A stretch of DNA of 64,000 nt, from the NCBI GenBank assembly GCA_002269645.1, contig NIVC01000244.1:266484-330483 (forward strand), in the 5' to 3' direction. Source of the stretch: Macrostomum lignano. Taxonomy: Eukaryota. Under the pieces are notes generated by a model. That model was not told the DNA's origin. It saw only the letters and a program-made list of their open reading frames with translations, and did no database searches. A program made the translations under genes and the position numbers. Below are positions 9,545 through 45,040 of the stretch, piece after piece (position 1 is the first letter of the stretch; each line of letters begins with the position of its first letter).

Positions 9545-13628
<4,084 letters not shown>

Positions 13629-15573: not shown

Positions 15574-17116
15574 CTGGCCGTGATTTATAGTGCAAAGGCA
15601 TGTACCAATGGAAGACGTTCGCTAATTGAATTTTACTCGTTGCTTTTTTCAGAGAAAAACAGAACGCAGTTAGAAAGCACATACGGAGGGGGTCAGGGAA
15701 TGCGGCCCCACTCCCGAAAATAATGACAGAAGCTAAACTTATGCCACATTGGATGCGTTATACTAGGAATTGGGTGCGTCAACCGGTCTAGGAGATGGGG
15801 TTGGGGAGCCCACCAAGTGACAGGGACGCCCAACTAGTAGAAAGGGGCAGCAACGAGGACACCGAATATTGACGCCCCTCCAATTAAAACTTGTGCGTAC
15901 GCCACTTGCCCAAGCAGTATAGCAGATAGACACGAGTGCCTACGCCACGCTAAAGCTTCAAGAATCTTACCGCTCCTTACATTAAGATTACTTAAGAAAT
16001 GCATTCATACAATTCTGATGGGTGTTATCTATCCTATCCACCAGCGTAGTGCTGTGCTTCATACCGCGGGTACTTATACTCACAGGAGTTGGTCCTGCTA
16101 ATAGCTATAGTCTAAAGGTAGGTACAGAGTATTACTAGTATAATAAAATTTGATCTTACATACTACTTTACTTCTGCTACACAAGTTTTTATGTCGCGCT
16201 CTGTCTCGTTTAGGATGGACGTTAATCTCGATACTGAGCACTTGGAGTTGACAAGGCACAATCTGCATCAGATGCAAAATTGACTGTTCTGTTTTTCGTT
16301 CAAATAGCGCATTGTTTACTCGCTAATTTTACCGAGTCGCAAGAAACAGATGCTATGCGAGACACCTACAAACAGTTTATAAGTTTAGTTGCCTTCGGAG
16401 GAAGGGTGATGCGTTGATGAGCACAATATTACTCCAATTAGAATTCCAACTCTTCACAGGAGCAAGCAAATACCTTGTGTATAATAATATTAGGTTTATA
16501 TTTCCCACACGAATGTCTACCATGGAAATGTTTAGCATGCAAAGTTAATTAACAAAAGTGCACGAAAGTGTTATGAATTTTTCGTTACTTGCATATCGGC
16601 ACATTTTTAACAATATTTGTTCACTTTCCTAACTTACGTAGTGGTAGTGGTAAGGTAGTTGTAGATCCCACAACCGCAAATAAACGTGAAACAATGGTGA
16701 ATAATTAAAAAGTTTCACTAAAAAATCCAATATTGAACTTGGACTTTGTCAGATAATCAGGACTTGCAGAAGGCGCAATGAACGCTCAACTAAAATTTAG
16801 CATTCGATTGGTTAGGATGAAGACGAGTTTCGGCACACACGGATATTGATTGGCTTGCCAGAACAATATTGAAGTGAGTTCGAATAGATATAATGACCAA
16901 CCGACTTGGCCAAAACCTGATTCTTATTAATCTCAAGAAGACAACAACCGTATTACAGTCATATTTAGCGGTTACAAAATCTGACTAAATTGCCTTCTAC
17001 AGGTGCCAGCAACAGGTTAGTTACTATATTCGCGTATTTAATACGTAAACAGTGCCAACAAAAGATTGAGAAGCAGTACGCGGCGTCAACTTTGTTTCAG
17101 ATAATTGTCGGCACCT

Positions 17117-18246
17117 ATGACAAACGGGTCTTCAGTAGTGAAGGATTCCTATCCGACTCCATGGTTCTTCGATGAGTCGTGGAACTGGGTGACGTGGCAC
17201 ATCTTCGTGTGGCTGTTTCCGCTGCTATGTGGGCTCGGCGCGATCGTCAATGCTGGCGCCTTCTTCGTCATTGCGACCAACCGCAAAGTGTTTCCGTACG
17301 TCACCCGACAGTACATGCTCGTCATCACGATGAACGACTTTCTTATTCTCACATTTAAAGCTGCTACTCACTACTTTGGGTACATGTCACTTATGTAAGA
17401 GAGAACGCTTGGACGTGGTACAGGACTCCTAGAAACGTCAGCTTTCCTCTGTGCATTGTCTACGACTTCCTGACGTATTATGCGCTGTCTGGGACGCAGT
17501 TTTATCAGCTCGGCCTCACAATCGACCGTTTGGTTGCCGTAGCGGCGCCTCTGAAAGCGAAGCAAATTTTGACCCGCAAGAGAAGTTGGTGGCTCCTAGC
17601 CCTCATCACCGCCATGGCTTTGCTTTTGCCAATTTTGTACGTCAGCAACCGAGACTGGAATGCGGAGTTTAATGTCTGCGATATTAAATCTTTAAATTAC
17701 GTGCTGAACATTTACAACCCATTCGATCTCTATTTTGGTCGAGTGTTTCTTCTGAGCGCCCTCATCATAGGCACAGCGGCCATCTGCCTGCTGCTGGTGT
17801 GGAACAACCGCTCGACCAAGAGAATGCAACTTGAGGCTGGGACTGACACCGGTAAGGGTCGGCACCGATCGCTGATTCGCATCACCCTGATCCTCGTGTT
17901 CCTCAACGTCACCTTCTTGGTGACGGCCCTGCCGTGGAGCATAGTGTCCCAGCTGCATGTTCACCTAGAAAAGTCAATGGGCCGGGATCCGTACATGATC
18001 TTGCTGCGCCACCTGAACACTGTGGTGTACGCCAATAACGCATTGAATTGGCCAATATACTTTATGGGCCGCAACTTTAGAGCTGCATTTGCCAGCAGCT
18101 TCCTGCCCAAGTGGCTAGGCAAGGCCGGGATTACGGCACGCTGCAGATTGTGCTGCGACAAGAACAAGAGCGATTCTATGGAGAAGCCTTCTCAAAGCAG
18201 CGCCAACAATGGCAATGGGAACGGTAAAGCGTCGAATACCAGCTAA
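17117..18246 (+). CDS. Intronless class A GPCR, copy 2, with one -1 frameshift at ~17390
   Basis: Paralogue of 14513-15573; IDRLVAV, NNALNWPIYFMGRNFR, Cys-containing C-tail. Restoring one G (as in copy 1, TCAGCTTAT) gives a single ORF. Confidence 0.8.
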
Positions 18247-19113: not shown

Positions 19114-22100
19114 TCACACACTACTGACGCTGCTTCCATTAGCGCCATTCTCGGCCGGTGCCATCGCGTGATCCTCTTCGCGGGTCCATCTGGCCAGCAG
19201 TTCCGGCATCTTCTCGGCCGAGTAGCGGCAGGCCTCAGACAGGCAACGGCAGGCCATCTGGCGGCCTTTCACTCGCCAGTAGCCTTCGCCGTAGTCGAAG
19301 CAGAGCTCCTCGCCAGGCGCCACGGGGGCGCAGGTGAAGAAGCACAAGCTGGGATAGCGCAGGTCCTGATGACTGCCTGGGAAGACGCGCACAGGCCGCA
19401 TGTTCGGCTCGCAGGCGTGGTTAATAAACCTGGCTCCCGTGCCGATTCTCAGCGCGTCGATGCAGGCGCCTGGCGCGGGCGCTCCGCCAACAAGGACGAC
19501 CACCCGATCGCCGGCTTCGCTGGTGGTAGTCTGCAGGTGAGATTCGACGTCGAACAGGTAAGAATCGTCGGCCCGAGAGTCGGCCTCGGTGTCGGTGATC
19601 AACTCGCCCGAGTAGGTGCACACGTAGCCGCCGGTGGGGATGAACTCCCGGGCCCGGAGGCCCCAGCCGCGGCCGTTGTCGGTGAGGAACACGGAGCAGT
19701 TGAAGCGGACTCCGCGCTGCACAACCTGGAGAGCGGAGAGGTTGGTGGTTCGATTTAGAATTCAGTTAGAATTACTCAGAATCGGATTGAGAATTTAAGA
19801 TACAAGCTTTGCACTTGGAGTTTTAGCTTCATGTTCACGATTCATAGTTCAGTATCCCAAAACTTCAGGATTCATAGTTCAGTATCCGAAAACTTCAGGA
19901 TTCATAGTTCAGTATCCGAAAACTTCAGGATTCATAGTTCAGTATCCGAAAACTTCAGGATTCATAGTTCAGTATCCCAAAACTTCAGGATTCGTATTTT
20001 CAGTATCCCAAAACTTCAGGATTCATAGTTCAGTATCCCAAAACTTCAGGATTCATAGTTCAGTATCCCAAAACTTCAGGATTCATAGTTCAGTATCCCA
20101 AAACTTCAGGATTCATAGTTCAGTATCCCAAAACTTCAGGATTCATAGTTCAGTATCCCAAAACTTCAGGATTCATAGTTCAGTATCCGAAAACTTCAGG
20201 ATTCATAGTTCAGTATCCCAAAACTTCAGGATTCATAGTTTAGGATCCGAAAACTTCAGGATTCATAGTTCAGTATCCGAAAACTTCAGGATTCATAGTT
20301 CAGTATCCCAAAACTTCAGGATTCATAGTTTAGGATCCACTACTTCAGGATTCATAGTTCAGGATCCACAACTTTGGGATTTATAGTTCAGGATCCAAAA
20401 CTTCAGGATTCATAGTTCAGTATCCGAAAACTTCAGGATTCATAGTTCAGTATCCGAAAACTTCAGGATTCATAGTTCAGTATCCCAAAACTTCAGGATT
20501 CATAGTTTAGGATCCACTACTTCAGGATTCATAGTTCAGGATCCACAACTTTGGGATTTATAGTTCAGGATCCAAAACTTCAGGATTCATAGTTCAGTAT
20601 CCGAAAACTTCAGGATTCATAGTTCAGTATCCGAAAACTTCAGGATTCATAGTTCAGTATCCGAAAACTTCAGGATTCATAGTTCAGTATCCGAAAACTT
20701 CAGGATTCATAGTTCAGTATCCGAAAACTTCAGGATTCATATTCAGTATCCGAAAACTTCAGGACTCATAGTTCAGTATCCCAAAACTTCAGGATTCATA
20801 GTTCAGTATCCGAAAACTTCAGGATTCATAGTTCAGTATCCCAAAACTTCAGGATTCATAGTTTAGGATCCAGAACTTCAGGATTCATAGTTCAGGATCC
20901 ACAACTTTGGGATTTATAGTTCAGGATCCAAAACTTCAGGATTCAAGACTTCAGGATTCATAGTTCAGGATCCAGAACTTTGGGATTCATAGTTCAGGAT
21001 CCCAAAACTTCAGGATTATTAGTTCAGGATCCAGAACTTCAGGATTCATAGTTCAGGATCCAGAACTTCAGGATTCATAGTTCAGGATCCAGAACTTCAG
21101 GATTCATAGTTCAGGATCCAGAACTTCAGGATTCATAGTTCAGGATCCAGAACTTTGGGATTTATAGTTCAGGATCCAGAACTTAAGGGCTCATAGTTCT
21201 GGATCCCAAAACTTCAGGATTATTAGTTCAGGATCCCAAAACTTCAGGATTATTAGTTCAGGATCCCAAAACTTCAGGATTATTAGTTCAGGATCCAGAA
21301 CTTCAGCATTTTAAAATTTGCGATCAGCCAAGGTAAAAACTCATCCAACTCGTACCCGATTCTTGCAGTTAGCCCAGCAGGAGCACAGCGGGCTGCACTC
21401 GAAGATGCAGGCCTCACTTGAGTGGCAGTCAAGAAAGTCTTCGGTCAGGCAGCCGGCGCTATCATAGGCGGCGCATTTGGACATTCGAACGCAGGGACAT
21501 CCGTCGGCGCTGTCGCATCGGCCATCGCGACAGTCGCAGGTGACAATGGTGGCCGATCGGTCCACGGGCAGGTGAGGCGATTCTCGAAGCTCTTTACAAT
21601 AGAAAAACTCAGGCGGCTCAACATCTGGATTGTGCGAGTAGAGCGGCAGCGGCAGGGCCTCGGTGCCGCGGGACAGGTCGCGGTGGAGCAGAGTCTCCGG
21701 CGTAGGCAGGTTGTCCGCTTCAGCTGCTCCGTTGGCTGGCGAACCTGAGGCGCCAGCGACCGCGGCAGCGGCGGCTGCGGCGGCGGCCGCCTCCATGCGT
21801 TGACGAAGTTGAAGGTCGCGGCAAAGTTCTACGGGCGTTTCGCGCTTCTTATTTACGGCGGTGGGATCGGCGCCGGCCAGGCAGAGGGCGAATGCGGCCC
21901 GATGGTGGCCGTGGGCGCAGGCCAGATGGAGGGCCGTGTCGCCGCACAGGTCGGGCTGGTTCGGGTTGCAGCTGCAATTGTTCGGCATCAGCATCGGGTA
22001 TTATTGGCTCAAGGCTATGGATTTATGGCTAAAGGATGCTTGCTAATTTATTCAAAACGGGAGGACTGCGAGCTTCTTGACGCAACGAAATCATGCTACG

Positions 22101-23798
22101 CCTTGGAGTTTTGGTATTTACGCCGGTCGTGGACATTAATCAGAGTTACCCTGATTAATTAATACATCGCCCCAGAATCGCATCAGATGACACAGGTAAA
22201 ATAGGAAAGATGTGACTCTGAACGACTTTAAAACCAAGTATAAGTCGTCAAAGAGTCAAATTGAAGCATTTTATTGCAGTCTGCAACTCTGAAACGACCC
22301 TGGGAGCCGTATAGTCGTACTTGAGGCGTGCGCTAGAGTCGCTTTAGAGTCACTGAGTTCTGTTTGAAGCGCAGTTGCGTCGCTTGATGAATCAGGGTCA
22401 TCAGCGCCATCACAATGATTCTTGGGACGACTCTTTAGAGATTCTACAACTCACGTGACGCACTTATGACGCAACAGTCGCTTTTTCGTTGCATTAGACG
22501 CGTTTAAGCTGAAGCTGCTCTACCAAATAGCTACAGATCGCGGTCCAGCCTCACCCTTTCGCTAGCAGAGCAGTGACCAGCCCGGGCTTGTCAAACCGCA
22601 GCGCCGCCAGGTGCAACAGCGACCGGCCGTCCCGGTCAACCCGGTGCGGACTGGCGCCCCAGTCCAGCAGGCGGACCAGGCAGTCGGCCTGGCCGCTCTC
22701 CGCCGCGCACATTGCCGGAGTCCAGCCGCCGAGATCCGGCCGGTCCAGTAGGCCCGGCCAGGCGTCGAACAGGCTGCGCAGGAAGCTGCACCAGCCGTGC
22801 ACGGCGGCCATGTGCGCCGGCGTGTGTCCGCCCAAATCGGCAGCGTTGGCGTCGGCGCCGGCCGACAGCAGCAGCCGGGCAACAGACTGGCTGCCCTTCC
22901 TTGTGGCCAGCAGCAGCGGAGAGCGCCGGCTGTAGTCGAGACAGTCGGCATCGACCCTGGCGGCCAGGAGCAGCTGGGCCAGGGGCACGCAGTCGGACAG
23001 TGCGCAGGCGTGCAGCAGACAGCGGCCTTTGCGCTTCGGATAGCGCTGGTGCGGGCTGGCTCCGCTGTGCAGCAGCAGGCGGGTCGCTTTGCGGAAATTA
23101 CCGGCGCTGGCGGCCCGCCAAAGGCGCTCGGCGGCGTCAGGCGGCGGCCGACGGGCCGGCATGGCGGAGGCCAGCAGGCCGGCGTGGGAGCCGTCCAAGA
23201 CTTGGTCTGCCAGCTGCTGCTCGCCGTCAGAGGATTGATCGTCGTTGTCGTCGGCGCTGACGCGGCTGCTGTTGTTGAGCTCTGTGGATCTCACTGCTTC
23301 CGACTGCTCGCTGCCGCTGGCTTTGAACTGCACCACCTGGCACGGGGTGGGGCCCTCCTGGCCGCAGTGGGGGCAGAACACCTGAAAAATGATATGAAGC
23401 TATAATAAACACCGAACCGAAATTCCCATACTTAAATCTGATTAGTTACAGTCTCATGACTCCATCACCTGTTGAGTAGACTCGCACCTGGGCGCGCACT
23501 CTAAATGGCACAGGTGGCTAACTCCGTTAGAACCGGCCTGGCACAGGTAGAACCGGCCAGTATGGCAGAACTGTCCGCAAGCCGGACAGACCAGGTGCTG
23601 GCGCCAGGCGGCCAGGTGCTCTCGGCACAGCAGAGCGGGCGCTGCGGCCGCCTCCTGGCAGGTGAGCAGCTGGTCCAGCTGGCAGACTGCAGCCAGACAG
23701 ATGGCGGGCTCGGCGCCAGCCGCCACACTCGACTTGCCGGGCAGCAGCTGCGGATGCCAGCACAGGCAGGTGCAGAGCGGGAAGTCAGCCGTGTCCAT
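19114..23798 (-). CDS. EHMT1/2: G9a/GLP-type histone H3K9 methyltransferase (Cys-rich region, ankyrin repeats, pre-SET, SET, post-SET)
   Basis: Exons 23469-23798, 22555-23381, 21356-21971 and 19114-19725 splice in phase. Motifs: FPLCTC...CREH..W.QHLVCPACGQFC..G...VFCPHCG; ankyrins; IFECSPLCSCWANCKNR|VVQRG; GWGLRA; YSGELITDTEADSRADDSYLFD; RFINHACEPN; ELCFDYG; CRCLSEAC. Confidence 0.93.
19835..21305. repeat. 29-30-bp minisatellite (AAAACTTCAGGATTCATAGTTCAGTATCCG), ~1.5 kb
   Basis: Fills the intron between the pre-SET and SET exons; variant blocks recur as a higher-order pattern. Confidence 0.95.
22188..22500. mobile_element. Interspersed repeat rich in ACGACT/AGTCGT motifs; related copy at ~34905-35340
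   Basis: Both copies begin CACAGGTAAAATAGGAA and share GAGGCGTG and GAGTCACT motifs. The second copy has an inverted pair CAGGTAAAATAG (34910) / CTATTTTACCTG (35024). Confidence 0.45.
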
Positions 23799-23996
23799 TG
23801 TAATTCAGCTGCTTATAATAGATAGATTGTCTGTGCCACAATCTACCTGCTGTTTCAGCTGCAAAACAGGCTAAAAGCCAGGTCTGTTTTAGGAATAACA
23901 CTGAGCATCAAGGATAGCAACAACGATTTAGTTTTTTTAGTATTCCCGTAAGTAAGAAATACGCTTAAAAATTAGATAAACATATTCATATTCATA

Positions 23997-24872
23997 GGAG
24001 AGGATTGTAGCCTATAGTGGTTAGAGCGTCGGACTTTCGACTTGAAGGTCGCGGGTTGGATTCCCGATCTCACTCGTGGACACGCGTGGTACCTCGCGGT
24101 TAGGGCTACTGGTTTTGCTAAGGATTTACTAGTGGATTTATTAGTTTACTGCTTGGTAGAATCGCTGCCACCAGGTTCCTGCTTTCTCTAATTCTGGTAT
24201 TTAGATTTAAAGAATTGAGTCAGGACACCAAAGATTATAGTTAACAGTAAAAAAAAGTATTTAATAATAAGAGAACTGCGTACAAAAGGTTATTTTACAT
24301 TGTCTACCTCCAAAACCATATACACAATCTATCATTACGTTAATTCCTAACTTTATTCCCCGTTATTGTGCTTTGGGCAAGACTCCCAGTTAATTCAGAG
24401 GCAAGACTCCTCTTGTGCAATCCCTATTTAGTTTTCCCCTTTCTTTTCCTTTTCTTACCGAATTCCTTGTTATTCGCAAGACGCGCAAGCAGGAGATGCT
24501 TTTCCAAGAGCCCAACTGCTCTGTATTTCTAAAGGATCCCGAAAACTAGCGATCTACCCCCGCACCAATTATTTCCCCGGGTTAAAACTACTCGTACTGA
24601 TAGTAGGCAAAAAGCATATTTCCCCGCAACTAATTCTCGTTCCTAAAATAATGCCCTACTACACTCGGAACAATTTGTGTTCTTGAGCAAGACACTTAAC
24701 TCTGCATTGCTTCAGTTCACCCAGCTGTAAAATGGGTGCCAGCATTAGCTGGGGTAATTGAGGGTGTGTGCGGCGGCCCCCCAGTCCTTGGACTGAACAG
24801 CCGTACGCAGCCTTCAGATGCGCCGCGCAAAAGCTGCGGCTGAGCTTTCGGTTGCACATCTGCCCAATCGAT
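23997..24872 (+). mobile_element. tRNA-derived CORE-type SINE, interrupted by a solo LTR
   Basis: A-box TAGTGGTTAGAGC and B-box-like GGTTGGATTCC; after the insert, TTCTTGAGCAAGACACTTAACTC...CAGTT...CTGTAAAATGGG closely resembles the CORE domain of MIR-type SINEs. Matches copies at 47055-47333 and 49855-50020. Confidence 0.8.
24077..24663. mobile_element. Solo LTR (587 bp) nested in the SINE
   Basis: TG...CA termini flanked by the 4-bp direct repeat CTCG (24073-76 and 24664-67). Removing it restores colinearity with the uninterrupted SINE copy. Confidence 0.75.
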
Positions 24873-25598
24873 TTAAATTAATTGGCCGGGGGTAGCCGTG
24901 CGATGCACACCTATGAGGGCCAACCCATAGAGGCACAGAGAGAGTGTACATGCCTGGCGATTAAAAAGTCAAAGTACACCCGGTGTGAGCTTGTGTATGA
25001 GTGCGTGACTGTGTACAGCATTAGCGCGCTTGCATGTCAGGCTCAGGAGTCAGCGGAATGGGCAGACGTTGTCGCCGAAGGCGTTGCACCAGAGTTCCCG
25101 CAGCCCTCCTGCATTGATTAGGTACTCAGCAAACCTATGATGACTGATAACAGGCTACTGATAAATGAAAAGATTAGCACAGAAGAGACAGTTACTGCAA
25201 CAAGGCGAAAAATTGCATGGCTATTCATACATCAATATTTAATAACTACACTCTAGTAGACGAAATGCGGCATGATATGAAGGCATACACAGACGGATTT
25301 TTAATAAAGGTTTTATTAACAACAACATTTACGTAAGAGTTAATCACACAAAATGACAGATGAATATTATTTTTATTCGTAAACTGAACTAATTTTTGTA
25401 CAATTAGATGACCTACTAGTCATTTTTTGCTCAAAAATGCTACTGAAAATAAACATTATTACACTATCGCAGCAGAATAAAATGGAAGTTTAAGCTGCGT
25501 ACTAACCGCGGCCAGCCATGCTTAACTTATGTGAACTTTCATGTTAGAAGTTCAAGGGTTGGAGAGCATGAGAACCACAATGGAGAGAGCAATCAATT

Positions 25599-27104
25599 CT
25601 AATCCTGCGGTTGCCGCAGTCTCCGCAGCGCCTCGGCCACCACTGCTCGACACTCCTCGGAGCCGCTGCTCAGCCTGGCGTAGTCCTCGGCCGAGCGGCC
25701 CCTGGCGTCCAGCTGGCTCGGATCGGCGCCTCCGCCGCCCTCCGACCGCGGCAGGAGCAGCAGCTGCACTAGCTCTGACTGGCCCTCGCGACAGGCCAGC
25801 TGCAGCGGCGTCACCCGATCGCGGGTGCCGCCAGTCGAGTCCGCAGCGCCGGCGTCAGGAAGCAACCTCAGCAGGTAGCGGCACAGCTCGGTTTGGCCAC
25901 AAACGGCCGCGTGATGCAGGCAGGTGTAACCGGCCGAATCCCAGCGATCGGCGCCAACTCCGCCGACAATGTCAAGAATGACGCGCAGACAGGCCAGGCT
26001 GCCGGCTTTGCAGGCCTCCATAGCCGGGGTGCAGCCGCACGAGTCGGCTGCGTTGGCCAGCTCCGGCCGGCCGGACAGCAGCTCGGACAGTAGGCCGGCG
26101 TGTCCGTGCAGAGCCAGAGTGTGTGCCGGGGTCCGACCGTTGCGAGCCGGCCGATCAGCCTGTCCGGGATCGGCGGCCAGCAGGAGCCGAACGCAGGCGG
26201 GCTGGCCGACACGGCAGGCCAGGTGCAGCGGTGTCCAGCCGTCCTTATTGACCAGGCCGGGCCGGGCCCCGTGCGACAGCAGCAGGCGCAGCATCGGCTC
26301 AAACGGCTTGGCGCTGGCCAGCATCAGCGGAGTCCAGTCGGCCCGTTTTAACGGGTCAACTGGCACCCTGCGGCACGCGGGTAGGTGGGATGTGTCTGGT
26401 TAGTAAGATTCTCTAACATTTGTGTCCGAAAGTGAGATTCGAACTCAATTAACATGGCTTCAATCGCTGAGTGGCACTGATCGATGACAGGAGTGATCCA
26501 TAGGGAGTCCTCAGTGACTGACCGGCGAATAAGGTTCACTGACCCCCGAGCACGCACACGCGCTCACACAGGTGCACATCGTCAAGCACGTAATGTACAC
26601 ACTGTGTGAATCACAGGCAACCCCAGGCCGATTTACGTGCGCAAGCCCCAAATGAATGCGGCCTGAGAAAGGAATCGAACAACTGGTACATGTACTTTTG
26701 TCCCGCTCTAATTTAGAGTCAATTTTCACCCTTAATTCAACAATGCTCAACAAGCAGCACCTGGCAACCCGTAGCAGCCAATCAGCGGCGGCCAGGGCGT
26801 CGGCCTGCGCCGCTTCGTGTAGCGCCCGTTTGCCGTCAAAATTCGACTGTCCGGCAAAGTCGGCGCCCCTGGCCAGCAGGTAGTCAAGCAACCGGACACT
26901 GTCCGACCGGCCAGACAGGGTAACGACGGTGTCGCCGGATCCGGGATGGTGCTCCGACAGCCACCAGGCGGACTGGCAGCTGTCAGCTTCGGTGGATTCG
27001 CCGGCAACTCGATCCTCAACGACGAAGGCGTCGAAATCGCCCTGCTGAGCCAGACGGAGCAGCCGCTCCAGCTGACGGCCGCGACTGTCGCGTTGCTTGC
27101 GCGG
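25599..27104 (-). CDS. ANKRD16: Ankyrin repeat domain-containing protein 16 orthologue (no genomic ATG found)
   Basis: Exons 26761-27104 and 25599-26367 splice in phase (VAR|VPVD). SGDTVV...DGKRALHEAA, VDPLKRADWTPLMLA, NKDGWTPLHLA and DSCGCTPAMEA match my recollection of human ANKRD16 (GDTLLH, YKRPLHEAA, VDCLKKADWTPLMMA, KNKDGWNSFHIA). Confidence 0.85.
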
Positions 27105-27121
27105 CTGGAATAGGGCGGGAT

Positions 27122-27972
27122 TGGGACTGATGGGATCGATGAGGGACTGGTGATGGGATTGATGAGAGGCTGGTGATGGGATTGATGAGAGGCTGGTGAT
27201 GGGATTGATGAGGGGCTGGTGATGGGATCGATGAGGGACTGGTGATGGGATTGATGAGAGGCTGGTGATGGGATTGATGAGAGGCTGGTGATGGGATCGA
27301 TGAGGGACTGGTGATTGGATTGATGAGAGGCTGGTGATGGGATTGATGAGGGGCTGTTGGTGGGATTGATGAGGGGCTCGTGGTGGGATTGATGTAGGGC
27401 TGATGGTGGGATTGATGAGGGGCTGATGGTGGGATTGATGAGGGGCTGGTGATGAGATTGATGAGGGGCTGGTGATGGGATTGATGAGGGGCTGGTGATG
27501 GGATTGATGAGGGGCTGGTGATGGGATTGATGAGGGGCTGGTGATGGGATTGATGAGGGGCTGGTGATGGGATTGATGAGGGGCTGATGGTGGGATTGAT
27601 GAGTGGCTGGTGGTGGGATTGATGAGGGGCTCGTGGTGGGATTGATGAGGGGCTGATGGTGGGATTGATGAGGGGCTGGTGATGGGATTGATGAGGGGCT
27701 GGTGATGGGATTGATGAGGGGCTGGTGATGGGATTGATGAGGGGCTGGTGATGGGATTGATGAGGGGCTGGTGATGGGATTGATGAGGGGCTGGTGATGG
27801 GATTGATGAGGGGCTGGTGATGGGATTGATGAGGGGCTGGTGATGGGATTGATGAGGGGCTGGTGATGGGATTGATGAGGGGCTGATGGTGGGATTGATG
27901 AGGGGCTGATGGTGGGATTGATGAGGGGCTGGTGATGGGATTGATGAGGGGCTGGTGATGGGATTGATGAGT
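27122..27972. repeat. 23-bp minisatellite (GATGGGATTGATGAGGGGCTGGT), ~37 copies
   Basis: Ends ~18 nt before the ANKRD16 acceptor and explains the spurious 489-aa ORF. Confidence 0.95.
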
Positions 27973-28747
27973 AAATGCATAATCCAGATAAAAAGATGGA
28001 AACTGAAATTAATAAATGGACAATTTAAGCTGCTCCTGCTAGTTAAATTGACATTTCATATTGGTTAGTAAAAGCTGTAATTTTTTATGGTGATGCAAAT
28101 GCTAGCATCTTTACACCCTATGCACATAAAAAATAATATATTTAACGTATTCAAGCAAAAATGAATAGCAATGAACAGTGCAGATAAATCCATTTTCAGA
28201 ACGATCAGCAAACAAACAGAAAAGACAGTTAGCGGTCGGTGAAATTGGAATTCAAAAGCCAAAAAATGAACACTATATCATATAGTTATCGCACAGTTCC
28301 TTATATGATAATGAGAATGCAATAAGTTTAACTTGCGATTCACAGAGCCTACTATGAGTAGGCTATAGTTGTCTACAAAAGAAATAGGCTGTACACGATT
28401 TAGCGAGCCTGAACCCGGCCTAGCAACACATGTTTACCATAGAAACAACACTTATATGATGTTATTAGCAGCGTAGAATATTTTTGTTACCATCTAAAAA
28501 CGCTTCACAATACAGTTTTGAAGGCATAATACCGGCAAATTCTCCAGACTTTAATCCCATTGTATCATGCGAAAATTTAAAAAGTTTAATTGAAACTTTA
28601 TCTAAAACTTTTTTACTAAAATGGACTATTAATTTGCAGTATTGCTGATCAATCAACTCTGCACATTAAGACTGTTGCTTTCTGGTCTACGTGGTCATAC
28701 GAGTATATGGGCTTTATTAATATTTAGAATGCCTTGTGCTATCAACA

Positions 28748-29179
28748 GATACTAGAAAAACTAGACGGGCCACTCAGCACATTTGCGTGTAAGCTACTTT
28801 CAGTTCAGTAGTAGGTTAGACAGAAGCATTTTAATGTATTTTTAAATCCAAGGCTCATTTATTGGCTCTTACCCCCCCCCGCTAAGCCCCCCAACCGCGC
28901 CTTTCCACACTTCCTCAATTTTTATTGCCTTTCTCTCGGAATTCTAGCCTAAAGCTGCCATGTACATTTCAGTGGACTGGCTAATGTACATTATTGCTGA
29001 ACCAATTAGCAAGCTGTTTACGCCTGCAAGCTTTGGGCTTCTAAACTTATCAAAGTCATTTCAGCTGCCTTTATTTTTATGAAATAGCTTATGTATTCTT
29101 CTTTGCTACTGAACTGTAAGTAGAAAGCTGTTTTACTTAGTATATGTGCCTGAGTGGCCCATCAAGTTATTTTAGTATC
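28748..29179. mobile_element. MITE with ~65-bp imperfect TIRs
   Basis: Left GATACTAGAAAAACTAGACGGGCCACTCAG...CTACTTTCAGTTCAGTAG; reverse complement of right GATACTAAAATAACTTGATGGGCCACTCAG...CTACTTACAGTTCAGTAG. Related copies at ~47768 and ~55006. Confidence 0.7.
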
Positions 29180-29365
29180 CAATTATTCACTTTAAATTTC
29201 AGTACAGTAGATAAAAATGTAGACCGATCAGGTAGACGGCGAGAGTAACCATGATTTATATAGTAATAAAACAACCTCGTCATCTAATTAGTAATAAAAA
29301 ATTCCAAACATTAGAATATTAATTAATGAGTTTAAATACAGAGAGTAGAGGGCATATCTCGGACA

Positions 29366-32300
29366 CTATTTGGGCCAGCCGCCGGCATCTCCGGACATCA
29401 TGGCCATAGAGTTGGCTGTCTCCAACGCGTACTGCGTCCCGTACAGCCCGCGGCATCGCAAGCCAAAATTGAGAATCTCCTGCTTGACCATTTTCTTACT
29501 GCCGCGATGCCGAATGATGCCGTTAAGGAAGGCGGACTTCTCGGTCTCGGTGACGCGAGGAGTCGGATAGTCCGGCCCGGCCAGCAGCTCGGACAGGCAG
29601 CGGCGCGCCTCGGCCGGGAAGCTGCGCACCAGGCAGAGCAGGACGGTGGCCAGGTGGTCGACAGCGAATCTGGGCGAGTCGCCGCCGATTGCTCGAACTA
29701 TTCGATGGCAAAGGGCGCGCATATGGTCCATTAGTACGGATTGGCCATTGTACCTGTCGCAGTGGGTGATGAACTCAACCAGGAGTAGACAGGCCGTTTT
29801 TAGCGTGCTCAGCTCGGGCAGGCTGAGGCCGCATAGAGCCACCTGATTGGGCGGCAGCGGGGAGGAGAGATGAAGCCGGATCTTTCGTTAATTGCTAAAT
29901 AAGGAAACAGGGCCAGCAGTGAAACTTGTAGTAGATAATAGTACTATAACCTGGTGCCGAGATATATCCGAGAATTGGGATGTAGGAGTGCAATCTGGGT
30001 GTGCAGATCGGAAGACTTTGCAGTGGGAGCAGAATGAGTGACCTATAGGAGTATAAAAGAGGAGGTCCCAGATTTTGAGCAGTATGCAAGTCAGGAATCG
30101 GGCAAACTCAAGCCTGCAAAGCCTCTCTATCCGGCCCTCGGGCCCTTTGAAACTTCACAAAAGCAATCCACCCGGCCCGATCAAGGTTTGGGTCTCTTCT
30201 CTGGCGCGCAGTCATGCGCTAGGTTCTCTATTTGGCCCCTAGAGATAAAAGTTTGCCAACCACTGATGCAAGCAAGCAGACAGAAATCCCACCTTGAAGA
30301 CGGAGTTCATATCCACCAGCTGGTGCAGCTGCATTGAACCGGAGGCCCGCCTAATCGCGTGGTACATCAAGCTGAGAAAGCTTTCAATAATGTCGGTACT
30401 CTGCCCGATACAGTTCTGCGCCTCGGCCTCGCGCAGATGCTGCACAGTCCGGCTAGCCATCGCGGTCAGCAGGCCGCTGACTGTGTCGCTGTGCGGAGCG
30501 CTGGAGTGAAAGCAGATAAGAATCTGTTTGGCCAAGTCCAGCAGCACACTCTGCGGCATCTCAGCGTAAGCCTGTACAACAAAGCTAGTCAGGGTGCCGA
30601 TGAGCGGCTCGAACTCCAGCTGGGTGGCTCGCAGCGCCCATTTGAACAGGTCGAACACGGCCTCCATGAGCTCGCGGTCGCCAACATAGACTCTAGTGAC
30701 CCGTTCAATAGGCCTGAGCAGCTTGTCCAGCAGCCACAGCACGCCAACATGCGGAGCGGCCAGCTGCGGCAGGTCGGCATCTGAGGAGCTCTCGTTAACG
30801 TCGTCATCGTCGTCGATGAGATGCGGCACGTCGCTGTTGCGTCGGGCGGCGCTGCCGGGAGAGACAGGCGGCGGCGCCGGGTTGCTCTTCTGCATGGCGG
30901 TAAACAGCCAGCCGAACAGCTTTAGCTTGGTGAGGATCAGCGCCTTCAGGGCTGGCTGGCTGGCCGAGTCCCGCTGCTGCTGCTGCAGGTCGGCAGATTC
31001 GGCTCCGCTAGAGTCCAGGCCGCAGGCTTCGCACAGCTGCAACAGCTGGGGAGTGCAGATCTTGTCCAGGTAGGCAATCATGGTGTCCCTGGGCAGCATG
31101 GACACAGTGTAGCCAACGCAGCACATAAGCCTGTTGGCGTCCGCTGGCGGCAACTGCTGTGTGGACAGTACGCCGGACAGGCAGTCAAGAATGGCCGAGC
31201 CGTGCGGCAGCATCTGGGCGTTGGAGAGTTCGGAGAGGGCGGCAGTGAGTATTAAAATTATCAAAGTATCGATTTCTTGTCTTCAGGTCAATGTACATAC
31301 CCTGTGCCTTGGGCATAATTGGCCCGTTTGGTTGTGAATAGCACGACAAGGCCCAGTTTTTGTGAAGGCCCTTTTAACAAGACCTTTGCGCGTGTTAAAA
31401 GTTTAATAAGTGTTGTTTGTGGTGTTGGAGTGAGCCCGATCTAAATACAGTGGCCAATGGAAAAACTAACTTCATTTGTTCAAAAAAATACAATTTCAAG
31501 CTACGATCCAATCCTGCGATGGTAACATGACTTGATAACATGACTGTCAGTATAACATCTCTGTGATTGTGACCGTCAAATACAGCAGACTGTCAGTATA
31601 ACATCTCTGTGATTGTGACCATCAAATACAGCAGACTGTCAGTATAACATCTCTGTGATTGTGACCGTCAAATACAGCAGACTGTCAGTATAACATCTCT
31701 GTGATTGTGACCATCAAATACAGCAGACTGTCAGTATAACATCTCTGTGATTGTGACCGTCAAATACAGCAGACTGTCAGTATAACATCTCTGTGATTGT
31801 GACCGTCAAATACAGCAGACTGTCAGTATAACATCTCTGTGATTGTGACCATCAAATACAGCAGACTGTCAGTATAACATCTCTGTGATTGTGACCGTCA
31901 AATACAGCAGACTGTCAGTATAACATCTCTGTGATTGTGACCGTCAAATACAGCAGACTGTCAGTATAACATCTGTGATTGTGACCGTCAAATACAGCAG
32001 ACTGTCAGTATAACATCTCTGTGATTGTGACCGTCAAATACAGCAGACTGTCAGTATAACATCTCTGTGATTGTGAGCGTCAAACACAGCAGACTGTCAG
32101 TATAACATCTCTGTGATTGTGACTATCAAACACAATAGACTGTCAGTATAACATCTCTGTGATTGTGACTATCAAACACAGCAGACTGTCAGTATAACAT
32201 CTCTGTGATTGTGACTATCAAACACAGCAGACTGTCAGTATAACATCTCTGTGATTGTGAGCGTCAAACACAGCAGACTGTCAGTATAACATCTCTGTAA

Positions 32301-35300
32301 TTGTGACCGTCAAATACAGCAGACTGTCAGTATAACATCTGTGATTGTGACCGTCAAATACAGCAGACTGTCAGTATAACATCTCTGTGATTGTGACCGT
32401 CAAATACAGCAGACTGTCAGTATAACATCTCTGTGATTGTGACCGTCAAATACAGCAGACTGTCAGTATAACATCTGTGATTGTGACCGTCAAATACAGC
32501 AGACTGTCAGTATAACATCTCTGTGATTGTGACCATCAAATACAGCAGACTGTCAGTATAACATCTCTGTGATTGTGAGCGTCAAATACAGCATAAGAAT
32601 GAAAACATTCGCATCTTGCAAATGGCATATGTTTTCAACTAAAAAACGGAGACTGGCACGGCAACCTCACCTGAAGCTGGTTAATCTGGCAGATATTGCG
32701 CAACGCTTTGCCAGCGCTGGCCCCGAGCTCGCCGCCCAACTGCATACAGCGCAGCACAGTTGGCAGCACATTATTCAACACGTAGGGATTGTCGCTCATC
32801 CACTCCTGATAGGCGCTGATCATGTCTAGAGCGGCCTGGATGCAGCGAACATTGGAGCTGAGCGGTAGCCTTGGCAACAATGAGAAAATATCGCGCAGCT
32901 CGGCATCGTGAGTGTCATTGTCAACAACATTCTCTGCGATGGCCTGCACTAGGAACAACACAGACTCAACGTGCTGCCAAGGCGGGGTGTAGTCAGCGGT
33001 GCAGAAGCTGTACAGCAGGCTGTACACCCACTGGAACAGGTTGGCCTTCAGTATGTTATAGGCGTACATGAATGTGTCGCCAATGTCTTCGCGGTAGCAG
33101 CGAAATTTTTCGCGATCGTCTTCGCCGAGTTCGGCTTCGGCTGCTTCGTCTGGCAGCTGGCATTTGCGCAGCAGCACCACCACAAGGCGCATGTACGCGT
33201 CCTGGCACCGGCGGGAAGGGGGCGGAAAGATTTAACCAACATCTCCATGGCAACGGAAACTATAACAATATGCCAAAAGTTATTAGCGGTGAAGGACTAC
33301 CAGGGGAGGAGGCGAACAATACCCACTGACAATTTCTGTCGCGCATCGAACGAGAGGAGAGCTGCAGGCACGTAAAAGACAATTTACTAAACATTATTTA
33401 TTAAAACCGCGTATTAGGCTAAAAAGTTGAAGCCGATTTTCGAGCCAACAACCCACTTTATCCTCTTACCGAGTTTTGTTTTTTATTTCTATTTAGCAGG
33501 GGCCAGAAATCTCCGGCCCGCGAAGCCTCGGGTTTTTTGAAATTCACATCAGGCCCTCTCTCCCCTCATCTCTCCCCTCATCTCTTCTCTCCCCTCATCT
33601 CTTCTCCCTTCTCTCCTATGTACCCTCTCTTTTCTCTTCTCTTATCTCCTCTCTCGACTGTCCCCTCATTTCTCATTTTTTATTTCTTTTTCCTCACTCA
33701 TCTGGCCCGCAGTCAGGAGCTGGATTATTTATCTGGCTTTTGAGATAAAAAAGTTTTTGTACATAAACTTAGTCTGAAGTTAGTCATTGATAGATACTTA
33801 ACTTTATGATTTTTTTTTGGAAGTACTTTGTGTACTAGCGTGAGCCTGCACTGCTCTCCAATTCGGGGGCCACTAAGAAAATTGCCAGAGGGTAAAATTC
33901 TCCTCCATATTTAGCACAAATAAAGTGCCTATTTACCGAACAATACACTATAGAGCAACTACAGCTTTGAAAGTGTCGCAGGCCCCCTTGTCTGGCTGGC
34001 TCGCACGCGCCATGGAACGTTGCTACCGGCGTTGCTGCCGAATACGCAAGGCGAGATGGTGACGATGATGATTCGAAATCGATGGAGCGACTACCGGATA
34101 TTGCGCGCGGTGCACCGCCATTCATGCACCTGAAAGTGCATCCTTTATTCATTGCATTTTTGGCTGTACACACACAATTTACAGCAAAACGCTATTCACT
34201 TAACCTTATAAACGTTAGCGCATGGTTCTGGAAGCTAAACAGATAATAGTCTATGGCCCAAAATCGGCACCGATTCAAATTATAGAAAACGAATAAAAAC
34301 TTTCTGATTTACACCCTAAAATAGCAACTTTTTAAGCAATAAATTTTGCACCTTCACCCAAGCGCCTTACCTGGAACAGGCCAACCAGATGGCTCCATTT
34401 GGTCTCGTCGCACGAGGTCAGCTCGTCCTGCAGCAGATACCAAAAGTACAAAGCGGAATCGGAGACCTGCTCGTCAGTTGGAAATCGGCCGGGCGCATCT
34501 GTGCAGCGCAGCACCATGGCTAACAGCTTGTGGGTGAGCTCCGTGTCGCCATGGTAACAAGTATCCAGCAACAGTCGGCACTGACTCTCGCACACAGTAG
34601 TTACTAAGCGGCAGAGACCCTGGGCGGTGTCCGAGCCGTCAGTGAGGGCTTTATCAAGACACTCGTCAAGGCTCACAATATAGGGCAGTAGGGAGCTGAC
34701 TGTGCCGGGAAACTTGTGCACACTTGGATGGGAGAAGATGTTGCACAGGCATTCTACAGCCTCCTCGAATAGGTCGGCATCGTGCAGGGCCTGCAGTTTA
34801 GCGAAGGATTTCACACCGTCTTAGCATTAATCCCCGATTAAAAGGGTACCTCAGGCCAAGAAGCGACCCAAAGTCAGTTGCGTCGCGCCCAGAGTCTGTG
34901 CAGGTGGCACAGGTAAAATAGGAAGAATTAAAGGAAAGACTCAAACGACGAGACCACGACGGTACAAGTCGCAAAAAAGTTGCCAAGAGTCGCCGGAGTC
35001 AATCTGAGACGTTTTATTGTTGTCTATTTTACCTGGGGGCTGGGACTGTAAAACGACTCCAGAGTCGTGTCTGAGGCGTGCTGGAGAGTAACTAAGTTGC
35101 GCATAAAGCGTATCTGCGGCACTTTATGAATTAGAATAGCATTTCACATTTATTACAACTCTACTTGAGTCTACCGGAGATAATACCAAGTTACCAAAAC
35201 GACCCTTAGACGACTTTTTCGCAATTTAATAGTCGCCTCTCCGTTGAACAACAGTCGTATGAGTCGTTAAAAAGACATGAGAGTCACTAGAGTCACTAGT

Positions 35301-37266
35301 GATTTGTTTGCAATGACTCTAAAGCATTTTTGTGTCTCGGTAGCGTTTTCAACAGTATCATTGACACAATATAACACTGCTAAGGAAAATTGCCCAGGAA
35401 AAAATAGTGTTAATCGAAAAATATAGCCTATTGTCCGACTTATCGAGCAAACAATTAAGAACTCTCCAGTTTAAACAGTGTTCGTTACCAAATAACTTCT
35501 GGCCGTAGCGCGCTCGCTGATTCGCTGACTTCAGGGTCGTCAATAACCCTCTAACCCCTGGGGCCTGGGCGCTCACTGATTCGCTGACTTCAGGGTCATC
35601 AATAACCCTCTAACCCCTGGGGCCTGGCCGCTCACTGATTCGCTGACTTCAGGGTCATTAATAACCCTCTAATCCCTGGAGCCTGGGCGCTCGCTGATTC
35701 GCTGACTTCAGGGTCATTAATAACCCTCTAACCCCTGGGCCTGGGCGCTCGCTCATTCGCTGACTTCAGGGTCATTAATAACCCTCTAACCCCTGGGGCC
35801 TGGGCGCTCGCTGATTCGCTGACTTCAGGGTCATCAATAACCCTTTAACCCCTGGGGCCTGGGCGCTCACTGATTCGCTGACTTCAGGGTCATCAATAAC
35901 CCTCTAACCCCTGGGGCCTGGGCGCTCACTGATTCGCTGACTTCAGGGTCATTAATAACCCTCTAACGCCTGGGGCCTGGGCGCTCACTGATTCGCTGAC
36001 TTCAGGGTCATCAATAACCCTCTAACCCCTGGGCCTGGGCGCTCGCTCATTCGCTGACTTCAGGGTCATCAATAACCCTCTAACCCCTGGGGCCTGGGCG
36101 CTCGCTGATTCGCTGACTTCAGGGTCATCAATAACCCTCTAACCCCTGGGCCTGGGCGCTCGCTCATTCGCTGACTTCAGGGTCATTAATAACCCTCTAA
36201 CCCCTGGGGCCTGGACGCTCGCTGATTCGCTGACTTCAGGGTCATCAATAACCCTCTAACCCCTGGAGCCTGGGCGCTCGCTGATTCGCTGACTTCGGGG
36301 TCATTAATAACCCTCTAACCCCTGGGGCCTGGCCGCTCGCTGATTTGCTGACTTCAGGGTCATCATCAAGCATCTATACTTATATACCTGTAACCACTGA
36401 TTCGTTAAACTATCAATTTCAGATAGAATTTAGTAATTAAAATTTAGTACGTTATCTAGATATACCTTTGTAAATTTATATTCGCTAATGAAATAGATTG
36501 ATAATTTGATACTACTCTCCGATGGCAAAACGTGACAGATCATCTATAGACAAAGTAAATGTGTAAGGTTCACCTGAAACACAATCAGCACCAGATCTAC
36601 GCTATTATCAATAGGCACTGAGAACTGCAGCCAAGCCGACAGGGCATTGATGCCGCTGCAGTACACCTGTTTCGGACAATGACCAGTGCTGAGAATCTCT
36701 CGGAAATATGCCATAATCCGCGGTACGCCTGCCTCGAGGTCCTCCTTGACGGCTGCCCGTTTCTGCGCCGGCAGCAGAACGGCGCAGAACTCCTCCGGTA
36801 TGATGCGCAACAGTTCCGTCAGGGCGCAAATTGCTTTCACGTTAGCCTCTTGCGATTTACCACGACTGCCGGCTTGGATATAATCCACTATGGACTCGAC
36901 AACTCCGGGCCAATGGTCCGGGCTCATGTAGAAGGCCAGATGGGCAACGGCTATGCACAGTTTCGACACTACAGCATGATTAGCGTACTCGCTACATTCC
37001 AACAGCTTGCCTAGCAGGGAAGTTCGCAATTCCACAGCTTTATCTAATGGCAAGGCCCGGCCACTGTGTATGATTTTAGTGCACAAAGTGCATGCTCCAA
37101 AGAACTGCACATAATCTGGCTTGTCATGCTGCAAAAATTTCCATGAAAATTCCCAGCCACTGTCAGAGATCTGAGCCGACATTAGCCATTGGTTGGCGTC
37201 TACAGTGTAGCCGGAGTTGTAGAAGCTGTGCAGCACAGACTCAACTTGTTCCTCACTGTACTCCAT
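29366..37266 (-). CDS. IPO13: Importin-13, 5 exons, ~1013 aa
   Basis: Exons 36574-37266, 34371-34790, 32671-33201, 30293-31213 and 29366-29842, all phase 0 with GT-AG. N-terminus ANQWLMSAQIS..GWEFSWKFLQ.DK..VQFFGA; acidic loop WYLLQDEL; FRCYREDIGDTFMY; C-terminus NFGLRCRGLYGTQYA. Confidence 0.93.
31550..32590. repeat. 46-bp minisatellite (GACTGTCAGTATAACATCTCTGTGATTGTGACCGTCAAATACAGCA), ~22 copies
   Basis: Contiguous copies with no spacers, in IPO13 intron 3. Confidence 0.95.
35510..36360. repeat. 58-59-bp minisatellite (CGCTGATTCGCTGACTTCAGGGTCATCAATAACCCTCTAACCCCTGGGGCCTGGGCGCT), ~14 copies
   Basis: Contiguous copies in IPO13 intron 1. Confidence 0.95.
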
Positions 37267-43801: not shown

Positions 43802-43848
<47 letters not shown>

Positions 43849-44112
43849 GACTAACTAACTACCTGCCTACCTTAACTAACTAACTAGCCAACTAACTAAC
43901 TAGCTAGCTAACTAACTAACTAACTGACTGCCTAACTAACTAACTAACTGACTAACTAACTAACTAACTAACTAGCTAACTAACTAACTAACTAGCTAAC
44001 TAACTAACTAGCTAACTAACTAGCTAACTAACTAGCTAACTAACTAGCTAACTAACTAACTAGCTAACTGACTAACTAACTAACTAACTAGCTAACTAAC
44101 ACACTATCTACG

Positions 44113-44146
<34 letters not shown>

Positions 44147-44196
44147 GCTAACTAACTATATAGCTAGCTAACTAACTAACTAACTAACTATCTACG

Positions 44197-44254
<58 letters not shown>

Positions 44255-44415
44255 GCTAACTAACTATATAGCTAGCTAACTAACTAACTAACTAGCTAAC
44301 TAACTAACTAACTAGCTGACTAGCTAACTAACTAGCTAACTAACTAACTAGCTAACTAACTAACTAGCTGACTAGCTAACAAACTAACTAGCTAACTGAC
44401 TAACTAACTAACTAG

Positions 44416-44458
<43 letters not shown>

Positions 44459-44860: not shown

Positions 44861-44902
<42 letters not shown>

Positions 44903-45002: not shown

Positions 45003-45035
<33 letters not shown>

Positions 45036-45040
45036 CTACG

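What the first reader, a model, noticed from the sequence alone, without database searches (positions are those of the whole stretch)
26761..27125. ANKRD16 has no ATG: initiator may be donated by the spliced leader
Seen: the first coding exon starts at CCCTATTCCAG|CCG CGC AAG CAA in phase 0, with no in-frame ATG anywhere in the exon. PRKQRDSRGRQLERLLRLAQQG already aligns with the extreme N-terminus of human ANKRD16 (MAQPGDPRRLCRLVQEG). I found no convincing ATG-bearing upstream exon before IPO13. Established: flatworm spliced leaders end in AUG, which can serve as the start codon. Inference: translation is obligately dependent on trans-splicing.
Basis: partly seen in the sequence, partly recalled or inferred. 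Interest (0 to 1): 0.72.

Follow-up and report, generated by a model that had tools for sequence, protein, structure and literature searches.

The report
Flatworm gene likely started by spliced leader
A conserved ankyrin-repeat gene (ANKRD16) of the flatworm Macrostomum lignano has no start codon of its own and most likely borrows the AUG at the end of the trans-spliced leader, a mechanism already described in flatworms in 2006.

Summary
On the minus strand, exon 1 (27104..26761) begins right after TTCCAG| in phase 0. It has no ATG in any frame. Spliced to exon 2 (26367..25599), it gives an intact 370-aa ANKRD16 orthologue. The species is Macrostomum lignano. Its published spliced leader ends in ATG, and TTCCAG fits its top trans-splice acceptor motif, [T/C]TNCAG. 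Codon bias starts at the acceptor, and the first Met of the orthologues aligns within about 11 residues of it. Initiation from the leader's AUG is therefore the best explanation (about 0.7).

No transcript data could be reached, so trans-splicing at this site is inferred, not shown. "Obligate" dependence is not established either.

The frame stays open upstream through a 23-nt x 36.7 minisatellite to an in-frame ATG at 27980. That stretch is open in all three frames, shows no codon bias, no excess of synonymous changes and no Pfam match, and no orthologue has such an extension. About 19% of the window is similar arrays. I read the array as outron, not coding.

The mechanism has been known since Cheng et al. 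2006 in Schistosoma, and later in Echinococcus. This is an ordinary new instance of it.

The parts
27105..27125 (-). 3' splice acceptor region: pyrimidine-rich tract ending in TTCCAG|. It is the predicted SL trans-splice acceptor, and the AG is at 27106-27105.
   Evidence: Sequence read. TTCCAG fits [T/C]TNCAG, the top motif at M. lignano SL acceptors (PMC8629364). It is one of only 5 such motifs in the 2.26 kb between the IPO13 stop and exon 1, and the only one in phase 0.
26761..27104 (-). ANKRD16 coding exon 1 (344 nt, 114 codons plus 2 nt). It starts CCG CGC AAG (P R K), has no ATG in any frame, and ends at the donor AG|GTGCTG.
   Evidence: Codon score is +0.29 bits/codon in frame 0 and negative in the other two frames. 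It aligns to orthologue N-termini.
26368..26760 (-). Intron 1 (393 nt), GT...CAG
   Evidence: Joining the exons restores the frame and gives the conserved VDPLKRADWTPLMLA motif.
25599..26367 (-). ANKRD16 coding exon 2, ending at stop codon TAG (25601..25599)
   Evidence: Ankyrin repeat Pfam hits. Codon score +0.28 bits/codon.
27128..27971 (-). 23-nt minisatellite, 36.7 copies, sense-strand unit CATCAATCCCATCACCAGCCCCT (C 51%, G 5%). It is the predicted outron or intergenic spacer removed by trans-splicing.
   Evidence: It is open in all three frames. Codon score is -1.3 bits/codon in every frame. There is no synonymous excess in the ORF frame: 8 of 34 changes, against 10 and 15 in the other frames. 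No Pfam match.
27978..27980 (-). Only ATG in the roughly 950 nt upstream of the acceptor on this strand. It is in frame with exon 1 through the array and is the start of a mechanical 489-aa ORF.
   Evidence: Because all three frames are open, the chance of being in frame is 1 in 3.
25312..25377 (-). Two AATAAA hexamers (25377..25372 and 25317..25312), 220-290 nt after the stop. They are candidate poly(A) signals of ANKRD16.
   Evidence: Read directly from the sequence. Their function is inferred.
29366..29842 (-). Last coding exon of the upstream same-strand gene IPO13 (stop codon at 29368..29366), 2.26 kb upstream of the ANKRD16 acceptor
   Evidence: Pfam Importin_rep_3, E = 5e-22.

Best explanation
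The ANKRD16 pre-mRNA of Macrostomum lignano is trans-spliced at TTCCAG|CCG (27105|27104). Everything upstream, including the 844-nt minisatellite, is outron and is discarded. The 35-nt spliced leader (...TTTATTGCATG) is joined directly to CCG. Its 3'-terminal AUG then becomes codon 1 of a 371-aa protein, M-PRKQRDSRGRQLERLL..., behind a 32-nt leader-derived 5' UTR.

Shown here: the exon structure, the lack of any ATG in exon 1, the motif and phase of the acceptor, the onset of the coding signal at the acceptor, and the agreement with orthologue N-termini. Taken from the literature: the SL sequence ending in ATG, the acceptor motif, and the in vivo use of the SL AUG in other flatworms. Inferred: that the SL is actually added at this site, and that ribosomes start at its AUG.
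For: 1. Species and SL. The only close database hit is a frameshifted M. lignano model of the same gene, with long identical stretches. The M. lignano SL is CGGTCTCTTACTGCGAAGACTCAATTTATTGCATG. About 30% of its genes are trans-spliced, and 70% of trans-spliced genes are conserved with human.
2. Acceptor. TTCCAG matches the top SL-acceptor motif [T/C]TNCAG. Only 5 such sites lie in the 2.26 kb spacer, and this is the only one in phase 0.
3. Start codon. No ATG occurs in any frame for 387 nt of mature RNA. The first one would delete about 126 conserved residues.
4. Codon bias. It is +0.29 bits/codon in exon 1, the same as exon 2, against -1.3 in every frame immediately upstream.
5. Orthologues. 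The Met of 18 orthologues aligns 0-11 residues from the predicted Met, and none has a long N-terminal extension.
6. Precedent. The SL AUG is in frame in 28% of S. mansoni trans-spliced transcripts and is required by more than 40 cDNAs. In E. granulosus, 143 of 187 SL-bearing clusters are full length from the SL ATG. Macrostomum authors call the SL's terminal ATG a translation start codon.
7. Context. Repeat-inflated spacers between same-strand trans-spliced genes are described as typical of M. lignano operons.
Against: I obtained no SL-containing read, cDNA or annotation for this locus. The paper supplements held nothing on this gene and a full-text search returned nothing.

Sequence alone cannot tell a trans-acceptor from a cis-acceptor. 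An in-frame ATG at 27980 is joined to the exon by an open frame. Two ATG|GTAA candidate donors lie upstream, at 28493 and 28440. By vertebrate Kozak rules the SL AUG context is poor (T at -3, C at +4).
Confidence: 0.7

Rival explanations
1. The acceptor at 27105 is a cis-splice acceptor. A short upstream exon in the 27980-29366 spacer, or a donor of IPO13, carries the ATG, possibly as its last three bases, and is spliced to CCG.
For: Two sites with the form ...ATG|GTAACA (28493) and ...ATG|GTAAAC (28440) lie upstream on the same strand. In parasitic flatworms acceptors are often shared between cis- and trans-splicing. The spacer is 1.4 kb of AT-rich DNA that could hold a promoter.
Against: Two ATGGTR sites in 2.26 kb is about what chance gives (my estimate is about 1.2). 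No candidate with a strong GT[A/G]AG donor and an open ATG-started exon was found. The predicted N-terminus is already as long as or longer than those of the orthologues. The acceptor fits the trans-splice motif.
Confidence: 0.15
2. Translation starts at the ATG at 27980. The 23-nt array is coding and gives ANKRD16 a 292-aa Pro/Ser/His-rich N-terminal extension, as in the 489-aa mechanical ORF.
For: The ORF 27980..26511 is uninterrupted and in frame with exon 1. ATG 27980 is the only ATG in the roughly 950 nt upstream.
Against: The array is open in all three frames, so being in frame is a 1-in-3 accident. The codon score is equally poor (-1.3) in all frames. There is no synonymous excess in that frame: 8 of 34, against 10 and 15. 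The unit length is not a multiple of 3, and runs of 9, 5 and 2 identical units point to recent gain or loss of whole units, each of which would shift the frame. There is no Pfam match and no orthologue has such an extension. Some 19% of the window is comparable non-coding arrays, several of them inside introns.
Confidence: 0.05
3. No AUG is used upstream. Either translation starts at a near-cognate codon in exon 1 or at the first real Met (nt 387, giving a protein without its first 126 residues), or this copy is a start-less, decaying duplicate in a partly polyploid genome.
For: M. lignano carries many duplicated genes. The first ATG of the mature RNA is in frame. The UniProt model of the gene also lacks a Met.
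Against: The 370-codon frame is intact. Codon bias in exon 1 equals that in exon 2, and residues 58-126 include invariant ANKRD16 positions. That argues the N-terminal part is translated and under selection. A leader-supplied AUG makes a non-AUG start unnecessary.
Confidence: 0.06

Closest known systems
Flatworm mRNAs that use the spliced leader's 3'-terminal AUG as initiator methionine (Cheng, Cohen, Ndegwa & Davis 2006, J Biol Chem 281:733; called slORFs in PMC9851317)
   Same: The SL ends in AUG. The acceptor lies directly at the first sense codon, in phase 0. The recipient exon has no AUG of its own. The predicted N-terminus matches conserved orthologues, which is the same criterion used for E. 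granulosus in PMC3510090.
   Different: The species is the free-living macrostomid M. lignano rather than Schistosoma or Echinococcus, and the gene is ANKRD16. SL addition and initiation are not shown here, whereas Cheng et al. tested them experimentally.
M. lignano SL trans-spliced genes and repeat-inflated operons (Ustyantsev & Berezikov 2021, PMC8629364; Wudarski et al. 2017, PMC5730564)
   Same: The acceptor motif is [T/C]TNCAG. The gene is conserved with human. The upstream gene (IPO13) and the downstream gene (EHMT-like) lie on the same strand. The spacer is largely simple repeat plus a MITE-like element, and about 986 nt remain after subtracting them, including the IPO13 3' UTR.
   Different: Whether IPO13 and ANKRD16 share one primary transcript is unknown. 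The poly(A) site of IPO13 and the SL status of both genes could not be checked.
ANKRD16 (ankyrin repeat domain-containing protein 16) of other metazoans
   Same: It is 32-37% identical over nearly its full length and is collinear with the orthologues. It has the invariant KRADWTPLM and NKDGW motifs, and its length (370 aa) falls within the orthologue range of about 336-396 aa.
   Different: The orthologues aligned here all begin with their own Met. This gene has none encoded next to its first codon.

Membership tests
SL-AUG-initiated flatworm mRNA | The organism's spliced leader ends in AUG immediately before the SL donor site | tested here: met
   The published M. lignano SL is CGGTCTCTTACTGCGAAGACTCAATTTATTGCATG, followed by GTAAG (PMC8629364; PMC10468722). 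The species was assigned through P0001. The SL RNA gene itself is not in the window.
SL-AUG-initiated flatworm mRNA | A 3' splice acceptor of trans-splice type lies at the 5' edge of the first coding exon | tested here: met
   TTCCAG|CCG fits [T/C]TNCAG. It is one of 5 such motifs in 2.26 kb and the only one in phase 0. The motif is enriched at SL acceptors but is not exclusive to them.
SL-AUG-initiated flatworm mRNA | The SL is actually joined to this acceptor in mature mRNA | not testable with these tools
   No M. lignano transcript data could be reached. The supplements and the full-text search gave nothing.
SL-AUG-initiated flatworm mRNA | The SL AUG is in frame with the main ORF with no intervening stop | tested here: met
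   ATG|CCG CGC AAG... reads through 370 codons to TAG.
SL-AUG-initiated flatworm mRNA | No alternative AUG lies near the 5' end of the recipient RNA | tested here: met
   Exon 1 has no ATG in any frame. The first ATG is at nt 387.
SL-AUG-initiated flatworm mRNA | The N-terminus obtained from the SL AUG corresponds to that of conserved orthologues | tested here: met
   In alignment A1, the Met of 18 orthologues lies 0-11 residues from the predicted Met.
SL-AUG-initiated flatworm mRNA | Ribosomes initiate at the SL AUG in vivo | not testable with these tools
   This needs ribosome profiling, N-terminal proteomics or reporter assays.
ANKRD16 orthologue | Ankyrin-repeat protein whose best matches over its full length are ANKRD16 proteins | tested here: met
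   The top named hits are ANKRD16 or ANKRD16-like from molluscs, arthropods, echinoderms and chordates, with E values from 1e-54 to 1e-33 and 62-96% coverage. Pfam finds Ank_2, Ank and Ank_4. The alignment is collinear with 36 invariant columns.
Downstream gene of an M. lignano operon (criterion of PMC8629364) | Same-strand neighbours with a repeat-adjusted intergenic distance under 1 kb | tested here: inconclusive
   From the IPO13 stop at 29366 to the acceptor at 27105 is 2,260 nt. Subtracting the 844-nt array and the 432-nt MITE-like inverted-repeat element leaves about 986 nt, which still includes the IPO13 3' UTR of unknown length.
Downstream gene of an M. lignano operon (criterion of PMC8629364) | Both genes are SL trans-spliced or co-transcribed | not testable with these tools
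   No RNA data. IPO13 and the EHMT-like gene each have a TTGCAG motif 40-60 nt upstream of their own ATG, which is suggestive only.

The most novel reading that the evidence does not exclude
The in-frame ATG at 27980 is not an accident. Transcripts that escape trans-splicing would be translated from it through the minisatellite into a long Pro/Ser/His-rich N-terminal extension. The choice between trans-splicing and outron retention, together with array length, which changes frame with each unit gained or lost, would then switch between two ANKRD16 isoforms or turn the long one on and off.
Probability: 0.03. Interest if true: 0.55.

Novelty: new member of a known kind. Interest (0 to 1): 0.22.

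Why it matters
The main value is for annotation. Gene finders that require an encoded ATG will go wrong at this locus in one of three ways. They may truncate the gene to Met127. They may extend it through the minisatellite to ATG 27980, producing a 292-aa artefactual extension. Or they may emit a start-less fragment, as the existing UniProt model of this gene does. Recognising SL-AUG genes gives the correct N-terminus. For biology, it adds one conserved gene in a free-living, basally branching flatworm to the set that appears to depend on the leader's AUG. That fits the view that this use of the SL is old and widespread in Platyhelminthes. It neither opens nor closes a major question.

Tried and rejected
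1. Direct transcript evidence.
- The exon-2 ORF products (GTG start and Met start) and the 489-aa ORF are not on record.
- The protein search found no Macrostomum transcript-derived protein. It found only the frameshifted, Met-less UniProt model P0001.

2. Literature.
- PMC8629364 has no held supplements.
- The supplements of PMC5730564 do not mention ANKRD16 or IPO13.
- No paper holds both 'Macrostomum' and 'ANKRD16'.
- Wasik et al. 2015 is not held under the id I tried.

3. The SL RNA gene is not in the window. There are no Rfam families and no tRNAs.

4. Coding minisatellite. I rejected this on the codon score, the synonymous/non-synonymous count, the unit length, the lack of a Pfam match and the orthologue alignment.

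5. Upstream ATG exon with a strong donor. None was found. There are only two ATG|GTAA sites, which is about the chance expectation.

6. The N-terminal 67 residues of P0001 could not be mapped convincingly to the window, so I took no information from them.

Full report
**What is there**

The feature lies on the minus strand. Reading that strand, a C-rich tandem array ends at 27128. It is followed by ...ATCAGTCCCAATCCCGCCCTATTCCAG|CCGCGCAAGCAACGC..., and the first base after the AG is 27104. From there a 344-nt exon runs to the donor AG|GTGCTG at 26761/26760. A 393-nt intron ends in CCGCAG|G. A second exon, 26367..25599, runs to a TAG stop. The joined CDS is 1113 nt and in frame, and it encodes 370 residues, PRKQRDSRGRQLERLL...RRLRQPQD.

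Exon 1 has no in-frame ATG. It also has no ATG in any frame, where 3.2 are expected from its composition. The first ATG of the spliced RNA is an in-frame Met at nt 387.

**Identity and species**

The protein search returns ANKRD16 and ANKRD16-like proteins from molluscs, arthropods, echinoderms, cnidarians and chordates, with E values of 1e-54 to 1e-33 at 29-43% identity. Pfam finds only ankyrin repeats.

The one close hit, P0001, is a UniProt model from Macrostomum lignano. It carries long stretches identical to the window's product, interrupted by stretches that match other reading frames of the same DNA. It is the same gene as predicted from an error-prone early assembly, and it has no initial Met either. 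The window is therefore M. lignano.

The upstream same-strand gene is IPO13 (first ATG at 37266, stop at 29366; Pfam Xpo1, TPR_TNPO3_IPO13_4th and Importin_rep_3). The downstream same-strand gene is an EHMT-like Ank + Pre-SET + SET methyltransferase.

**What is known about the leader**

PMC8629364 gives the following for M. lignano:
- The 35-nt SL is CGGTCTCTTACTGCGAAGACTCAATTTATTGCATG.
- About 30% of genes are trans-spliced.
- The top motif at SL acceptors is [T/C]TNCAG, placed right at the junction.
- 70% of trans-spliced genes are conserved with human.
- Repeats contribute substantially to intergenic distances in operons.

The general mechanism is established. According to PMC9851317, Cheng et al. 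2006 found the SL AUG in frame in 28% of S. mansoni trans-spliced transcripts and required by more than 40 cDNAs. PMC3510090 found 143 of 187 E. granulosus SL-bearing clusters full length from the SL ATG, and found that use of the SL AUG is conserved among Neodermata. PMC12582326 notes that all reported flatworm SLs end in ATG.

**Tests of the exon boundary**

1. Motif. TTCCAG is an exact instance of [T/C]TNCAG. Only five instances occur in the 2.26 kb between the IPO13 stop and exon 1. This is the only one in phase 0, and it gives more than 114 open codons after a leader ATG.

2. Codon signal. I used a codon table from 1927 codons of other exons in the window and scored each segment against its own base composition. 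Exon 1 scores +0.29 bits/codon in frame 0 (-0.28 and -0.77 in the other frames), the same as exon 2 at +0.28. The 876 nt upstream score -1.31, -1.31 and -1.34 in the three frames. The coding signal starts at the acceptor.

3. Orthologues. In an alignment with 18 ANKRD16 proteins, LERLLRLAQQGD aligns to the first conserved helix. The orthologues' first Met lies 0-11 residues from the predicted Met, and none has a long N-terminal extension. Residues 58-126, which would be lost if translation began at the first encoded Met, include invariant positions (G58, D59, N89, K93, H97, A99, K123, D126).

The frame does not close upstream of the acceptor. The ORF listing reports a 489-aa ORF from an ATG at 27980, in frame with exon 1. 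The intervening DNA is a 23-nt minisatellite with 36.7 copies, 94% matches and no indels. I tested whether it is coding:
- It is open in all three frames for at least 302 codons. ATG 27980 is the only ATG in that stretch, so its being in frame is a 1-in-3 event.
- There is no frame preference in the codon score.
- Of 34 substitutions relative to the consensus unit, 8 are synonymous in the ORF frame, against 10 and 15 in the other frames.
- The unit length is not a multiple of three. Runs of 9, 5 and 2 identical units point to recent whole-unit turnover, and each such change would shift the frame.
- It has no Pfam match, and no orthologue has such an extension.
- Arrays of this kind make up 19% of the window. 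There are 18 of them, including some inside IPO13 introns and in the EHMT-like gene region.

I conclude that the array is non-coding spacer or outron. It does, however, undercut the literal claim that nothing upstream could supply an ATG.

**Other routes to an AUG**

I scanned the spacer for ATG-started open exons ending at a phase-0 GT donor. This found no case with a GT[A/G]AG donor. It found only two sites where an exon could end in ...ATG|GTAA (28493 and 28440), which is about the chance expectation. These cannot be excluded without RNA data. Near-cognate initiation and a decaying duplicate copy are possible in principle, but the intact frame and the normal codon bias argue against them.

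**Operon context**

From the IPO13 stop to the acceptor is 2,260 nt. Removing the 844-nt array and a 432-nt element bounded by 30-nt inverted repeats leaves about 986 nt, which still includes the IPO13 3' UTR. That is near the 1-kb repeat-adjusted threshold used to call operons. IPO13 and the EHMT-like gene each have a TTGCAG 40-60 nt upstream of their own ATG. Co-transcription is plausible but untested.

**What could not be done**

No M. lignano transcript could be reached. Window-encoded ORFs are not on record. The supplements and full-text search returned nothing for this gene. SL addition at 27104 and initiation at the SL AUG therefore remain inferences.

**Verdict**

The word "obligately" is not justified, and the mechanism is a known and common feature of flatworm gene expression. 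The finding is a correct and useful annotation call rather than a discovery, and I score its interest at 0.22.

Noticed in passing
window 27128-27980 (-): A 23-nt x 36.7 minisatellite lies directly upstream of the ANKRD16 acceptor. It is open in all three sense-strand frames, and a single ATG (27980) is in frame with the gene, giving a mechanical 489-aa ORF that an ATG-requiring gene finder would probably call.
   Followed up: yes
whole window; e.g. 43762-46489, 19834-21310, 31542-32593, 35510-36365, 48610-49770: Eighteen separate tandem arrays cover about 19% of the 64 kb. They include a 2.7-kb (ACTA)n tract and large minisatellites inside IPO13 introns and within the EHMT-like gene region. 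Many give long spurious ORFs in several frames.
   Followed up: partly
window 28748-29179: A pair of 30-nt inverted repeats (87% complementary) 372 nt apart lies in the IPO13-ANKRD16 spacer, and the similarity seems to extend further by eye. It looks like a MITE-type insertion.
   Followed up: partly
window 37266..19117 (-): Three conserved genes lie head to tail on the minus strand: IPO13, ANKRD16 and an EHMT-like Ank+Pre-SET+SET gene. IPO13 and the EHMT-like gene have TTGCAG acceptor-like motifs (exon starts near 37306 and 23858) 40-60 nt upstream of their own ATGs. There, a leader AUG would be out of frame and would open a short upstream ORF. This may be an operon-like cluster.
   Followed up: partly
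P0001 (UniProt M. lignano model) against window 25602-27023: The public protein model of this gene is a mosaic of the correct frame and shifted frames, lacks an initial Met, and has a 67-residue N-terminal part that does not map cleanly to the window. This is probably an artefact of an error-prone early assembly.
   Followed up: partly
window 12422-13387 (+) and 11955-12758 (+): These ORFs have an RNase H domain hit (E = 8e-8) and are flanked by 30-nt tandem repeats at 11686-11970 and 13367-13523. This is probably a retroelement fragment.
   Followed up: no
window 14565-15242 (+) and 17105-18243 (+): Two neighbouring rhodopsin-family GPCR-like ORFs (7tm_1) share sequence, e.g. LCGLGAIVNA. This looks like a local tandem duplication.
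   Followed up: no
window 1-1173 (-) and 4149-4445 (-): Exons encode I-set immunoglobulin and fibronectin type III domains of a large Ig/FN3 protein (DSCAM-like or titin-like) that runs off the window edge.
   Followed up: no
window 24700-24850 (-) and 47069-47341 (+): The same translated motif (AHLKAAYGCSVQGLG...) appears in both places. There is also a tRNA-like stretch near 24000-24120 that ARAGORN does not call. This is probably a dispersed SINE-like repeat.
   Followed up: no
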